A stretch of 64,000 nt of DNA, taken from assembly GCA_013265495.1 (NCBI GenBank), contig MU057781.1:1054001-1118000 (forward strand). Direction: 5' to 3'. Origin of the DNA: Vicugna vicugna. Lineage: Eukaryota. The translations under genes were made by a program, and so were the position numbers. The stretch's first letter is position 1. The number at the start of each line of letters is the position of its first letter. Positions 55,535 to 59,951 of the stretch are shown in pieces. Under the pieces are notes generated by a model. The model saw nothing but the letters and a program-made list of their open reading frames with translations, ran no database searches and was not told the origin of the DNA.

Positions 55535-55659
55535 TCACACGATGGCCTGGTGCGGCAGCCCGTAGAGGACCATGTTGAGGGCGATGGGGAGCCGCTCTGC
55601 GCCCTGCAGCTGTGGCCGGAGCAGCGCCAGCTTGTCCTTCCAGGTCTGCAGAGGCTCGT
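55535..55659 (-). CDS. CFAP46: CFAP46 terminal coding exon, (D)EPLQTWKDKLALLRPQLQGAERLPIALNMVLYGLPHQAIV*
   Basis: ctcctcacag acceptor; TGA at 55537-55535; the nine exons total 809 nt in one continuous frame. Confidence 0.85.
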
Positions 55660-56439
55660 CTGTGAGGAGCATGGACGGGGCTTGTGAGACGCGGGATCCC
55701 CGGGCTCAGGGCGCATGGGGGGAGTGGGAGGGAGGGGAGGGCGCTGCTGGCTCTGCCTCCCTCCAGAGGCGAGGACCCGCTGCCCGTCCTTACAGGCGAG
55801 GGCCCCAGGGCCACCCGCCCACTCTCTCACTCCATTGCTTGCTCAGCCACTCAACAAGCATTTCTCTCTGGCCCCTGCAGCCCGCCCCCGCCACCGTGGA
55901 CCTTGCGACTCTGAGTCTGAAGCGCCCTTTGCGCCCTGTGTCCCGAAGACGCCATGCTGTGGACCTGACTCTGTTTCCACCACTTTGACAGGCGCTCATG
56001 ACTCTGGATCATGCTGGGACACACCTCCCTCAGACCGGCCCTTCAACCTGCGTCTGGAGCTCCTGCTCGGGCAGCATGCAAGGTTTTACAGCAGGACCCG
56101 TGCGTGACGCTGCTGCCCCCTGTGGGATCGGGGCTGCCTTTGCCCTGGAGGAGCGGTGGGTGGTTCCCTCACATCCAGAAAGCACACCAGGGCTTAGAAT
56201 TTGTGGGGCCTGAACCGTTCTGAGATGAATTAGCAGCTCCCCTGACCCGAGTGCTGTGTGCTTCCCCCTAACGACCTTTGATGCCAGACCTCGCTACGGC
56301 CAGGACCCGTGGGAGGCTGACGTTGTCAGCACGTGCTGGCCTTCGGAGGCTCCCTGCCCTGCAGGGCTGCAGGGGCAGCGGCTGGGAGGTGGCAGCCACA
56401 AAGCCTGATGAACCAGTGAGGAGGGTGGCCTCTGGTTAC

Positions 56440-56520
56440 CACGGTCCGCCGCTTCACCGGCTCCCATCTTCTGAAGGAGGTGGGTCGTTCTCCCGATGGA
56501 CTTGCCAACTGCCAGCAGAT
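56440..56520 (-). CDS. CFAP46: CFAP46 penultimate coding exon, (N)LLAVGKSIGRTTHLLQKMGAGEAADR(D)
   Basis: ttccccag acceptor after an 81-nt intron, 81 nt, GTAACC donor. Confidence 0.85.
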
Positions 56521-56601
56521 CTGGGGAAGAGACGTCCCTCAGACGGGCCTCTGGGAGGCCCAGAGGGAACCAGGCTGGACCGGGGTCCCCTCACGACTCA
56601 C

Positions 56602-56738
56602 TCTCCCACAGGACGCTGGCCCGCATCGCATTGTCCTGCAGGACCGTCGGCCACTGGTTCGCCACGATGCTGCGGACCCCCACCAGACTCAGAAGGATGG
56701 CAGTCCGGACGGGCTCCTCCAGGGACAACCGGAGTGCA
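56602..56738 (-). CDS. CFAP46: CFAP46 137-nt coding exon, (S)ALRLSLEEPVRTAILLSLVGVRSIVANQWPTVLQDNAMRASVLWE(N)
   Basis: cctgcag acceptor, GTGAGT donor; bridges phase 2 to phase 1 and keeps an open frame to the terminal YGLP motif. Confidence 0.88.
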
Positions 56739-57370
56739 CTGCAGGGGACCGGGCTCCCGTGGGTGGCGCCCAGGGGCTCAGCCCGAGCCCTCCCCCACCC
56801 GCAGCCCAAGCACCCCACGTGGGGACGTGTATCTGGGCTGACAGCTCTTAAGGTTCTTGACAGCATCAAGAATCCTGCCCATCCTCCCCACACACCATTA
56901 AGCAACATTTAACAAGAAAGGTCATTTCTGAGTCCAGCCAAGTCCCTCCGGACGGCCCCCAGCCACAGGGTGGAGCCAGGAGGGAAGCGCCCCCAGGCAC
57001 GGGTGGTCCCCGCTCAGCCCGCAGCCCACAGAGGCCCTGGGGTGGCATGTGACATGTGAGCTGTGAAGCCAGGGTGTCCTCCGAGCTGCCAGCCCTCTGT
57101 CTCCCAGCTCAGTCCCAGCCGGCCTGTGGTCTGCTGGTGGAGCCGCCCTTTCCCCACCCCCACCCCCACCCCCAGGGGACTTTGCCATGGAAGGGTCTGG
57201 GGCAGAGCATGGAGCCCCCACACAGTCACGGTGCAGAGACAGTTGTGTCCCCCGCACTCCCCAGCGGCACACCCATGGCTCGGATTCCCCACCCCATGCC
57301 CTGTTGCCTGCCCCAGCTACCCGGGGGCCGGGCTGCGAGCTGCAGCCTGTGCAGAGGGGACGCCGGGCAC

Positions 57371-57452
57371 CTCTTGTTCTCCGAGGACTCCAGGCGCCGC
57401 CGCATGCTGGTGTAGGACCGCGTCAGGTCCAGCAGGACCATCACCTGGCAGT
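57371..57452 (-). CDS. CFAP46: CFAP46 coding exon, (D)CQVMVLLDLTRSYTSMRRRLESSENK(S)
   Basis: cacag acceptor, 82 nt, weak GTGCCC donor; phases consistent. Confidence 0.9.
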
Positions 57453-58483
57453 CTGTGGGTCACAGGAGGGCGGCTCAGCGCCCTGGGGGTCCTTGCAGGC
57501 GGGTGTCGCCCGCGGTGCAGGTGGACCACAGAAACCCACCCCACCTGCCTGGGACTCGGACTTGACGTCCCTTTTCTGGGCTGCACTGGCCGCACGGGCA
57601 TTATTTGCCTCAGGGCCCTACCCCCTCCACACTCCCCTAGGCGACCAGGCCAGGCAATGGGAGGGGCGGGCAGCCCTCCCTGCCCCGCACAGGGGCCTCG
57701 GCTCCCAGCCTCCGCCCAGGAGGGCCAGCGTCGGGATGCAGCGCTGGGCTGTGCTGTGCAGGTCCGGCCCCTGGAGGACAGGCTCTGGTTGGTGACGCTG
57801 TCAGCCCTGCAGGGCTGTGAGCCTGTGAGAGCTTCTATTTCATTCGCCATCTCATTCGAGAAGGTGGGAATTAAAGTTTCAAAGAGGTCTGTTTCCACCT
57901 CCCCTGGAGTATATGGGTCCCCCCAGCGGACAGCTTGTGGGGAGCCAGGTGACAGGGGCAGTTCAGGCGTCCTGACCACAGGACAAGTGTCCACGTGCCT
58001 GTGGTGCCAGCCTTAGTGGAGCCACGCTCAAGGGTAGGGGCCACCTGTGAGGGTCCCTGAAAAGGCTCCTCCAACTATGCACAGTGGCCACCTGCCCAGC
58101 AACCGCCCCAGGAGAAGGTCAGGCGCGGGCAGGCCCCATGGGGTGGGGGTGGGGGGCGCTGGGGGCACCGCCACCAGCAGACGGGACGACGGCACTGGGG
58201 GCCCGTATTCCACCTAGAAGGACAGGCAACGGGGGGCTGGGCCAGCTTTCCCAACCCCTGGAGGGCTGACCCCCAGCTCCGGACCCTGGCCCTGTCTCTC
58301 AGAGAAATGGAGGAGGGGTCCTGAGCAGAGGCCCCCTGTGCCTTCCTAAAGTGCCCCCCAGCCTTTGTCAGAGGACGGGGAGACACCTGATGAGACACGA
58401 GAGGAGACACAGGGGCCCTGCTCTGTCCTGTGTGGACCCCACCTGTGCCTGTGGGTCTGGCAGACTCAGGCTCCCGGGCTCAC

Positions 58484-58596
58484 CTTGCAGATTCATGGCG
58501 GCCAACCTCTCCACCATCACGTGGGACAGGAAGCTCTCCATCCCGTAGAAGAAGAAGCCTTGGCAGCTGCCCAGGAGCTGCTCCCACTCGGCCTGG
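58484..58596 (-). CDS. CFAP46: CFAP46 coding exon, (S)[37 protein letters not shown](D)
   Basis: cgcag acceptor, 113 nt, GTGAGC donor. Confidence 0.93.
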
Positions 58597-59279
58597 CTGC
58601 GGGGGCCGGAGAGAGGACCCAGTGGGCAGGAGGCGGCAGGAACAGGCCCCACAGCTGCCCGACATGCTGGCCAAGCAGACAGCACCCGCGGTGCAGCCTC
58701 CTCTGCACTCTTCGCGGACACAGAGCCACGTTCACCCTCCCAGTGCCTGCGGGGTCCCCGGGCGGCTGGTTCGGGGGACTCTCCTGAGAATGGACCTCGG
58801 GGCTCGGGAATGAGCCCCGCCTCCCGGGCAGCGAACCTGAGAGGGGCTAGAAGGGCCTGCCCGCCGGCCCTGGAGCCCAGGCGCCCAGGGCACCCACTGG
58901 GGCCGCGTCCCTGCCGGGTGGGGGGAGCTCACCACCCTGACCCCTGCAGGCTCGGCCCCACTCCTCCCGGAGCTCAGCCCCCGGAGCCCCACCCCCTCCG
59001 GGAGGGCCCCCCTGGGAGTCAGGACACACACACACACACACACTGTGCTGTACTGGCCGCGGGCCCTCGTGCAGGGTCACACACACCCCTGGGGGCCCAG
59101 GTCCTCAGCTAGGCCCTGCGAGGACCGAGGCACTGGAGGGCGTTGACAGGACAGAATGAGGGGATCAGGGCAGAAGGGAGCCTTGGGGGAGGGGGAGGGG
59201 CCCGTGTGCGGAGCCCCCTCCGGCCGGTGCGGCACAGCCCCACTCTGCAGGCCGGCGCCCTGGGAACCCAGATGCGGAC

Positions 59280-59382
59280 CTTGGGAAGTTCTTCTTTCCC
59301 AGATGGCCCGCCCATCTCGCAGTGAAGGTATCACGGAATCTTTCCAAAATTTCCCGGGTTACGGAGACAGGAGTCAGCACTT
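59280..59382 (-). CDS. CFAP46: CFAP46 coding exon, (E)[33 protein letters not shown](S)
   Basis: ttgcag acceptor, 103 nt, weak GTCCGC donor; phases fit both neighbours. Confidence 0.9.
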
Positions 59383-59784
59383 CTGCAACCAGAACTGGAT
59401 CATGAGATACGGGAGCACTGAGGGGTGTGCGTCCTCGGCGGGGCAGGGTGCCCCGGGCCGTGGCCCCTCACAGGCAGGGCCCCTCCCCTCCTTGTGGAGG
59501 GCTTTACAGCCCAACTCCCAAGAGAAGAGCCAAAGGACGCTGTTCTCGAGCCGCAGTGGCGCCCCCGGTGCCCGTCCTCAGGGGTTCATCTCACTCATGT
59601 CCTGTCCCGGCTGCAGACGGCGAGGGCCGGGTGTCGGGCACACGAGGGTCCGCCCCCCACGGTCAGCGTAGCAGGAGGTGACCTCCGTGGGACAGAGGCC
59701 CAGGCACCCGGTCCATGCTGCCCAGGCCCGGGCCAGGCCAGTCCAGGCCGTGGGTGGCGTGTGGCATGTTGCGGGAGCTCTCAC

Positions 59785-59820
59785 CTGTGCCCTGGGCCTC
59801 CTCGTAGGGGTCCACCATGA
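59785..59820 (-). CDS. CFAP46: CFAP46 36-nt micro-exon, (F)MVDPYEEAQGT(E)
   Basis: ccag acceptor, GTGAGA donor, phase 1 to phase 1, preserves the frame. Confidence 0.9.
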
Positions 59821-59890
59821 CTGGGCCTTGGTTAAGGAGACACAGGGCCACGGGCTCAGGGGTTTGGGCGGCCAAGCCGTCAAAGGATAC
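59821..59890 (-). other. CFAP46: U12-type (minor spliceosome) GT-AG intron, 70 nt, in CFAP46
   Basis: 5' site GTATCCTTT; branch site TCCTTAAC at 59838-59831, about 11 nt before the CAG; no polypyrimidine tract. Confidence 0.92.
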
Positions 59891-59951
59891 ATCTGAAGTT
59901 GTCCGAGTCGATGGTGATGCAGTCTGCGGGGATGATCCGGGGCACGCTGCC
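59891..59951 (-). CDS. CFAP46: CFAP46 coding exon, GSVPRIIPADCITIDSDNFR(F)
   Basis: ctcgcag acceptor, 61 nt, followed by the U12-type donor GTATCCTTT. Confidence 0.9.

What the first reader, a model, noticed from the sequence alone, without database searches (positions are those of the whole stretch)
55535..59951. CFAP46 C-terminus reads like a catalytically dead separase/caspase-fold (peptidase C50/CHAT) domain
Seen: the spliced frame gives FMVDPYEE...[33 protein letters not shown]...MNLQDCQVMVLLDLTRS...LEEPVRTAILLSLVGVRSIVANQWPT...ALNMVLYGLP. Known: the separase (clan CD, C50) domain carries in the same order Y(I/V)LNP, WxG...Ps.e...aL, LYxGHG (catalytic His), LLxGCS (catalytic Cys), EP.G...Yl.aG.p.vvgNLWdVTD and a terminal AApVvYGlP. 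Every block has a counterpart here, but His aligns to Met (FYGM) and Cys to Leu (LLDL). Inference: this ciliary central-pair TPR scaffold ends in a separase-like pseudoprotease, echoing the TPR-plus-protease layout of separase and bacterial TPR-CHAT proteins, and may clamp a peptide rather than cut it. Structure-based annotation may already note this.
Basis: partly seen in the sequence, partly recalled or inferred. Interest (0 to 1): 0.75.

Follow-up and report, generated by a model that had tools for sequence, protein, structure and literature searches.

The report
CFAP46 ends in a dead separase domain
The last exons of this mammal's cilia gene CFAP46 encode a domain related to separase, the protease that cuts cohesin, but without its two catalytic residues, so it most likely binds partners rather than cutting them; protein databases already flag this in places, but no paper I could search discusses it.

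Summary
RNA contigs from a close relative confirm all junctions.

- **Two corrections.** The domain also starts upstream of 59951, beyond the window end.
- **Homology.** Pfam Peptidase_C50 (separase) is the only family hit by the C-terminal parts of 48 of 48 vertebrate CFAP46 orthologues (best 48 bits, E 1e-12; mammals 22-26 bits, just under the cut-off).
- **Catalytic residues.** The His position is Met/Thr/other and the Cys position is Leu/other in 50 of 50 vertebrates. They are Val and Arg in Chlamydomonas FAP46, so the loss is ancient.

The peptide-clamp idea is untested. Precomputed Pfam annotation and one UniRef name ("CHAT domain-containing protein") already mark this domain, but no searchable paper does. 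The scan had already noted the same stretch (s1-258660).

The parts
60054..60124 (-). Exon for the Lys-rich, disordered linker (GNTKKEARGKDHKKRGPAKKGPK) that sits inside the separase-like domain, between its N-terminal blocks (outside the window) and the core.
   Evidence: The 3' end is fixed by RNA joint 59950/60053 (cut +1). The 5' end is inferred from the AG acceptor and a tblastn match to orthologues. The region has pLDDT below 50 in both models.
59891..59951 (-). It leads into strand beta1.
   Evidence: Splice sites; RNA joints 59950/60053 and 59820/59891.
59821..59890 (-). A 70-nt intron with a U12-type donor (GTATCCTT) and the branch motif TCCTTAAC (59831-59838) about 10 nt from the acceptor.
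   Evidence: Sequence. Its removal is seen in all four RNA runs.
59785..59820 (-). 36-nt micro-exon B (.MVDPYEEAQGT): the end of strand beta1 and loop L1. The Asp of 'VDP' (59810-59812) is invariant in orthologues.
59280..59382 (-). Exon C ([34 protein letters not shown].): helix alpha1 and strand beta2, with the invariant W-x-G (Trp at 59312-59314).
58484..58596 (-). Exon D ([38 protein letters not shown]): a helix, strand beta3 (GFFFY) and loop L3. Met at 58539-58541 occupies the position of the separase catalytic His, and the preceding Gly (58542-58544) is kept.
57371..57452 (-). Exon E (DCQVMVLLDLTRSYTSMRRRLESSENK): strand beta4 (VMVLL) and loop L4. Leu at 57424-57426 occupies the position of the catalytic Cys, and Asp at 57427-57429 replaces the Gly that precedes it in separase.
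56602..56738 (-). Exon F, 137 nt (SALRLSLEEPVRTAILLSLVGVRSIVANQWPTVLQDNAMRASVLWE): a helix, strand beta5 and the N-Q-W loop (56651-56659).
   Evidence: (joints 56738/57371 and 56520/56602).
56440..56520 (-). It encodes a helix of the domain.
   Evidence: RNA joints 56520/56602 and 55659/56440 in runs X1, X3 and X12. It is present in the 98%-identical P0001 and in mouse CFAP46 of PDB 9ijj.
55535..55659 (-). Last coding exon (DEPLQTWKDKLALLRPQLQGAERLPIALNMVLYGLPHQAIV, then stop): a variable loop, then the final strands with the near-invariant YGLP (Tyr at 55562-55564), at the extreme C-terminus as in separase.
   Evidence: Structural alignments run to the last residue of both the model and the separases.

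Best explanation
Window 55535-60124 (minus strand) holds the last nine coding exons of CFAP46, the large TPR scaffold of the C1d projection of the ciliary central apparatus. [quoted passage not shown] The fold and the family's motif order are kept: strand, then VDP; W-x-G; PS..EWE; strand, then G-[His]; strand, then [Gly-Cys]; NQW; terminal YGLP. The catalytic dyad is gone. Met replaces His and Asp-Leu replaces Gly-Cys. This holds in every vertebrate sampled and in Chlamydomonas FAP46. The domain is therefore an ancient non-peptidase homologue of separase, a pseudoprotease. Shown: the gene structure, the homology, the fold and the absence of the dyad. Inferred: it works as a non-catalytic protein-binding or structural module that helps hold the C1d complex together (CFAP46, CFAP54, CFAP74, CFAP221, calmodulin). 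It may do this by gripping an extended segment of a partner, or of CFAP46 itself, in the leftover substrate cleft, as separase grips securin.
For: Gene and splicing: clean GT-AG exons and ORF; all junctions seen in RNA contigs. One exon alone matches mouse CFAP46 in PDB 9ijj at E 2.8e-13, and the family profile matches it at 439 bits.
Sequence homology: Peptidase_C50 scores 48.1 bits (E 1.3e-12) for Komodo dragon, 37.1 for shark and 35.4 for lungfish, against a cut-off of 27.8. Mammals score 22-26 bits, E about 1e-5. It is the only family hit in 48 of 48 orthologue C-termini. Precomputed PF03568 is listed on many CFAP46 entries, mammals included. The top protein-language-model hit is 'separase (Fragment)' at 0.96, and all other top hits are CHAT or separase.
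Dead site: the His column reads M26 T15 L3 A2 F1 N1 P1 R1, and the Cys column reads L42 Q3 R2 H2 M1, across 50 sequences. Chlamydomonas FAP46 has Val and Arg there. These residues sit directly after strands beta3 and beta4, where clan CD places the dyad (PMC4357240).
Architecture: an N-terminal TPR region followed by a C50-like domain at the extreme C-terminus, as in separase with its TPR-like and protease domains (PMC12609080).
Against: The window's own spliced peptide could not be given to the profile or structure tools. The tests used orthologues that are 69-76% identical, plus P0001 at 98% over the last 114 aa. Mammalian sequences fall just under Pfam's gathering score in the tool's Pfam version. 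Neither the CFAP46 profile nor a single sequence found a separase chain in the PDB by sequence, so homology rests on the Pfam model and on structure. No residue-by-residue alignment to a separase sequence was available. The dyad mapping is therefore inferred from strand positions, from where the Pfam alignments end, and from numbering offsets. The N-terminal third of the domain (LPLE and SRDFSLQ blocks) was modelled with low confidence and lies outside the window. Nothing here shows what, if anything, sits in the cleft.
Confidence: 0.87

Rival explanations
1. The domain descends from a prokaryote-type CHAT domain (as in TTC28 or bacterial TPR-CHAT proteins) acquired independently, and is not a sister of separase. 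Under this reading the closest family is CHAT, not C50.
Against: C50 scores 22-48 bits against at most 12.6 for CHAT, and C50 is the only family at E<=1e-3 in 48 of 48. Separases outrank every CHAT structure by about 3 Z units and by 3-4 orders of Foldseek E-value. The domain ends at the extreme C-terminus with YGLP, aligned to the separase C-terminus. C50 and CHAT are related members of one clan, so this is a question of closest branch, not of fold.
Confidence: 0.08
2. The domain is still an active protease that uses other residues, or a partner's residues, in place of the canonical dyad.
For: One Cys (the 'EC' before strand beta4) is invariant in all 50 sequences, and a His in 'FLSH' follows the dead His position in many tetrapods.
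Against: The invariant Cys lies at the N-terminal start of strand beta4, the opposite end from the active-site loop. The 'FLSH' His is replaced by Tyr, Cys, Asn or Ile in lizards, sturgeon, shark, lungfish and medaka. The dyad columns hold no His or Cys respectively in any of 50 sequences, and the His column varies freely.
Confidence: 0.03
3. The similarity is only a generic three-layer alpha/beta (flavodoxin-like) fold with chance motif matches, so there is no homology with clan CD.
Against: There are independent, family-specific sequence hits to Peptidase_C50 at E 1e-12. Separases stand 6 Z units above the flavodoxin-like background. The low TM-scores reflect about 90 disordered residues in the model. 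The protein-language-model neighbours are all separase or CHAT.
Confidence: 0.02

Closest known systems
Separase (separin, ESPL1/Esp1/Cut1; MEROPS C50, Pfam PF03568)
   Different: No catalytic His or Cys (Met and Leu here). It has a long Lys-rich disordered insert and an extra variable loop before the last strands. It sits in the ciliary central apparatus, not at cohesin. Cleavage activity is not expected.
CHAT-domain proteases (Pfam PF12770: TPR-CHAT/Csx29 of Craspase, SAVED-CHAT, DdvA, TTC28)
   Same: The same clan CD fold. TPR repeats fused upstream of the protease-like domain. Automatic annotation already names some CFAP46 fragments 'CHAT domain-containing protein'.
CFAP46 / Chlamydomonas FAP46 (C1d projection; PDB 9IJJ, 7SQC, 7N6G)
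   Same: This is the gene itself. The domain is already built in the deposited central-apparatus models, and the family profile matches both (E 1.5e-130 and 1.1e-15).
   Different: The structural papers I could read do not name the domain. Han et al. 2022 call C1d 'predominantly composed of helical domains'. The mouse sperm paper lists only the partners SPAG6, LRRC43 and CFAP74.
Pseudo-caspase c-FLIP(L) and other clan CD pseudoenzymes
   Same: A caspase-fold domain that lost its catalytic residues but is kept as a binding module (PMC7586951, listed; abstract only read).
   Different: A different family (C14 rather than C50), a different partner logic (heterodimer with caspase-8), and no ciliary role.

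Membership tests
Peptidase family C50 (separase), Pfam PF03568 | Significant match to the family profile at or above the curated gathering score (27.8 bits) | tested here: inconclusive
   Met by non-mammalian orthologues: 48.1, 37.1, 35.4 and 33.1 bits. Mammalian orthologues score 22-26 bits (E 7e-6 to 9e-5), just under the cut-off. All 48 of 48 are significant at E<=1e-3. Precomputed PF03568.24 is listed on several mammalian fragments. The window's own spliced peptide could not be submitted.
Peptidase family C50 (separase), Pfam PF03568 | Clan CD caspase-haemoglobinase fold, closest to solved separase protease domains | tested here: met
Peptidase family C50 (separase), Pfam PF03568 | Catalytic His-Cys dyad on loops L3 and L4 (human H2003/C2029, PMC12609080) | tested here: not met
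   Met (58539-58541) and Leu (57424-57426) in the window. No His and no Cys at these columns in 50 vertebrate sequences. Val and Arg in Chlamydomonas FAP46. It is therefore a non-peptidase homologue, not a peptidase member.
Peptidase family C50 (separase), Pfam PF03568 | Helical-repeat or TPR-like N-terminal region with the protease domain at the extreme C-terminus | tested here: met
   TPR_CFAP46_N and TPR_12 lie upstream, and the C50-like match lies at the end of a protein of about 2,650 aa. Structural alignments end at the last residues of both proteins.
Peptidase family C50 (separase), Pfam PF03568 | Cleaves kleisin (SCC1/RAD21) after ExxR and is inhibited by securin | not testable with these tools
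   Needs biochemistry. Not expected, given the missing dyad.
CHAT domain (Pfam PF12770) | Match to the CHAT profile at or above 24 bits | tested here: not met
   The best score is 12.6 bits, E 0.093, in one mammal. There is none at E<=1e-3 in 48 sequences.
CFAP46/FAP46 orthologue group (central apparatus C1d) | Collinear high-identity match to CFAP46 proteins, including the one solved in the central apparatus | tested here: met
   A single exon matches 9ijj_A at E 2.8e-13. The window peptide is 69-77% identical to mammalian CFAP46 C-termini over 267-275 aligned residues. Named orthologues are listed.

The most novel reading that the evidence does not exclude
CFAP46 as a whole (TPR-like superhelix plus C50 domain) is a paralogue of separase dating to the last eukaryotic common ancestor. 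It lost catalysis before the split of green algae and animals and was fixed in the cilium. Its dead cleft permanently holds a securin-like pseudosubstrate segment of a C1d partner or of itself, so part of the central apparatus would be a fossilised protease-inhibitor complex.
Probability: 0.2. Interest if true: 0.8.

Novelty: new member of a known kind. Interest (0 to 1): 0.5.

Why it matters
To my knowledge (not tested here), separase is usually treated as the lone eukaryotic member of family C50. A second, catalytically dead member, conserved from Chlamydomonas to mammals and built into the ciliary central apparatus, gives a datable example of a cell-division protease fold reused as a structural part. 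It names a domain that is already present, unnamed, in the deposited central-apparatus structures. It also gives a concrete, checkable idea for how CFAP46 anchors C1d partners, which is relevant to the CFAP46 variants that cause primary ciliary dyskinesia (PMC11651342). The gain is in interpretation rather than in kind: automatic Pfam and UniProt annotation already flags the domain in some orthologues.

Tried and rejected
- **Per-exon Pfam scans** of the window's own peptides found nothing; the exons are too short.
- **Sequence search of the PDB** with the CFAP46 profile (E<=1) and with a single lizard sequence (E<=10) found CFAP46 and FAP46 but no separase chain. No residue-level alignment to a separase could therefore be printed.
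- **Full-length hmmscan** of Komodo and lungfish CFAP46 does not report C50, although their isolated C-termini score 48 and 35 bits. This probably explains the patchy database annotation.
- **A second AF2 model** with the full N-terminal extension (P0184:2230-2626) did not place the LPLE/SRDFSLQ segment confidently; pLDDT there was about 50.
- **Search for the N-terminal domain blocks** in 60001-64000 found nothing.
- **A profile search among 218-695-aa proteins** returned only vertebrate (almost all mammalian) fragments. It found no invertebrate or protist orthologues and no separases. Whether any lineage keeps an intact dyad was therefore not surveyed beyond vertebrates and Chlamydomonas.
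- **Literature searches** pairing CFAP46, FAP46 or TTC40 with separase, CHAT, caspase-like, pseudoprotease or peptidase found no relevant paper. Brown et al. 2012 and Gui et al. 2022 are not held.
- **Sandbox files:** no Pfam HMMs or model coordinates are available there.
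Full report
**What is in the sequence**

The stretch is read on the minus strand. Seven segments with AG acceptors and GT donors splice into one open frame that ends at the stop at 55535-55537: 59891-59951, 59785-59820, 59280-59382, 58484-58596, 57371-57452, 56602-56738 and 55535-59659's last exon, 55535-55659. One exon alone (45 aa) matches residues 2534-2575 of mouse CFAP46 in PDB 9IJJ at E 2.8e-13. The gene is therefore CFAP46.

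**RNA check**

I laid contigs from four RNA libraries of a close relative (95-99% identical) on 55400-60100. They carry the joints 59950/60053, 59820/59891, 59382/59785, 58596/59280, 57452/58484 and 56738/57371. They also show 56520/56602 and 55659/56440. It adds 27 residues (NLLAVGKSIGRTTHLLQKMGAGEAADR) between VLWE and EPLQTW. No contig joined 56602 directly to 55659. A predicted protein that is 98% identical over the last 114 residues (P0001), and the mouse protein, both contain this exon.

Upstream, exon 60054-60124 encodes a Lys-rich linker. With it, the window encodes the last 268 residues. The N-terminal blocks of the domain, conserved in all orthologues (ILLADK.L.ELPLEALS....SRDFSLQ), are not found in 60001-64000.

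**Sequence homology to separase**

A phmmer search of about 1.8 billion representative proteins with one exon returned full-length and partial CFAP46 proteins. I scanned their C-terminal 300-420 residues against Pfam.

| Orthologue | Peptidase_C50 (PF03568) score |
|---|---|
| Komodo dragon | 48.1 bits, E 1.3e-12 |
| Shark | 37.1 bits |
| Lungfish | 35.4 bits |
| Caecilian fragment | 33.1 bits |
| Mammals | 22-26 bits, E about 1e-5 |

The gathering cut-off is 27.8 bits. CHAT appears only once, at E 0.093. Across an alignment of 48 orthologue C-termini, all 48 hit Peptidase_C50 at E<=1e-3, and no other family is hit. A protein-language-model search put a 'separase (Fragment)' cluster first (0.96, 174 shared features). 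Every other top cluster was CHAT or separase.

**Fold**

I built an AlphaFold2 model without templates for P0027, a mammalian fragment 76% identical to the window's reading. Its core has pLDDT around 90, with the strand/helix order of a three-layer alpha/beta sandwich.

- **Foldseek against the PDB.** After CFAP46 itself, the hits are C. thermophilum, human, yeast and C. elegans separases and Chlamydomonas FAP46, at E 7.6e-7 to 4.4e-4. There is then a jump to unrelated flavodoxin-like proteins at E 6e-3.
- **AlphaFold DB.** The first seven Swiss-Prot hits are all separins. In the cluster library, CFAP46-like entries are followed by a 'Flagellar associated protein', a 'CHAT domain-containing protein', and then separases.

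The alignments run to the very last residues of both the model and the separases.

**The catalytic dyad is absent**

Clan CD proteases carry the catalytic His on the loop after strand beta3 and the Cys on the loop after beta4 (PMC4357240). In human separase these are H2003 and C2029 (PMC12609080), and in C. thermophilum H2083 and C2110 (PMC7863939).

In the model, strand 161-165 (GFFFY) is followed by Gly-Met, and strand 189-193 by Asp-Leu. Five independent Pfam local alignments end at profile position 328, on that Gly. The lungfish alignment ends two residues before the Leu. The VIA range for 5fc2_B (model 85 aligned to residue 2000) puts the Met at about 2082 and the Leu at about 2110.

In 50 vertebrate sequences the His column reads M26 T15 L3 A2 F1 N1 P1 R1, and the Cys column reads L42 Q3 R2 H2 M1. 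In the window these codons are 58539-58541 and 57424-57426. The profile also matches Chlamydomonas FAP46 (7N6G/7SQC) at E 1.1e-15. There the blocks read LLLDPALQSLPWEA...VSRSPSLQ and LLFLGVGRF...CEAALLFDRCNT, which gives Val and Arg at the two positions. The loss therefore predates the split of green algae and animals. Other conserved Cys and His residues are either at the wrong end of a strand or not conserved.

**How it most likely works**

- **Shown:** a conserved separase-fold domain without a dyad sits at the C-terminus of a TPR scaffold, and that scaffold is part of the C1d projection.
- **From the literature:** CFAP46 contacts SPAG6, LRRC43 and CFAP74 in mouse sperm. FAP46 is clustered with FAP54, FAP297 and calmodulin by FAP221 in Chlamydomonas.
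- **Inferred:** the domain is a non-catalytic binding or structural module. The loops at the C-terminal edge of the sheet keep invariant or near-invariant residues (VDP, the Gly before the dead His, NQW). This fits a cleft that is still in use, possibly gripping an extended peptide as separase grips securin. It could equally reflect fold stability.

I put about 0.87 on 'dead separase-family domain acting as a binding or structural module'. Within that, I put about 0.35-0.4 on the specific peptide-in-cleft mechanism.

**Comparison with what is known**

The domain is closest to separase, then to CHAT proteases, both in clan CD. It fails the defining catalytic feature. It should therefore be filed as a non-peptidase homologue of C50, comparable in logic to pseudo-caspases, and not as a separase.

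Databases partly know this already. Precomputed PF03568 is listed on many CFAP46 entries from lizards, frogs and several mammals. UniRef names a medaka fragment, and AFDB names a 211-aa entry (H2YF75), 'CHAT domain-containing protein'. The annotation is patchy, probably because full-length scans lose the hit.

No paper in the searchable library links CFAP46, FAP46 or TTC40 with separase, CHAT, caspase-like or pseudoprotease. One structural paper describes C1d as predominantly helical. Two key papers were not available.

**Verdict**

It is a new, or at least unremarked, member of a known kind, of moderate interest.

Noticed in passing
window 59821-59890 (minus strand): A 70-nt intron with a U12-type donor (GTATCCTT) and a TCCTTAAC branch motif (59831-59838) about 10 nt from the acceptor, next to a 36-nt micro-exon. 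All four RNA runs show it spliced out exactly. The scan had already noted it (s1-258661).
   Followed up: partly
It is supported by RNA joints and by orthologous proteins.
   Followed up: yes
P0052 and P0040 (full length) compared with their C-terminal parts: hmmscan of the whole 2,650-2,700-aa proteins does not report Peptidase_C50, although the isolated C-termini score 48 and 35 bits. This likely explains why only some CFAP46 database entries carry the domain annotation.
   Followed up: partly
Alignment A1, columns about 105-180 (orthologue region just upstream of the window's exon 60054-60124): The disordered Lys-rich insert inside the domain is expanded in squamates and salamanders into tandem 'DSGK.K'-like repeats of varying number.
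   Followed up: no
P0030 (Tamandua isoform X2), last ~70 residues: This isoform diverges after the 81-nt exon into an unrelated Pro/Arg-rich tail that lacks the terminal YGLP strands. It is an alternative or mispredicted 3' end that would truncate the domain.
   Followed up: no
P0037 (Salvator merianae, 299 aa): UniRef names this C-terminal CFAP46 fragment 'MutS-like protein'. The name looks like an annotation error. It was the only fragment with no Pfam hit.
   Followed up: no
window 55953-55996, in the intron between the 81-nt exon (56440-56520) and the last coding exon (55535-55659): Unspliced contigs of the related species skip 44 nt here, and a loose end runs into a (GT)n tract. This looks like a small indel or microsatellite difference between the species.
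   Followed up: no
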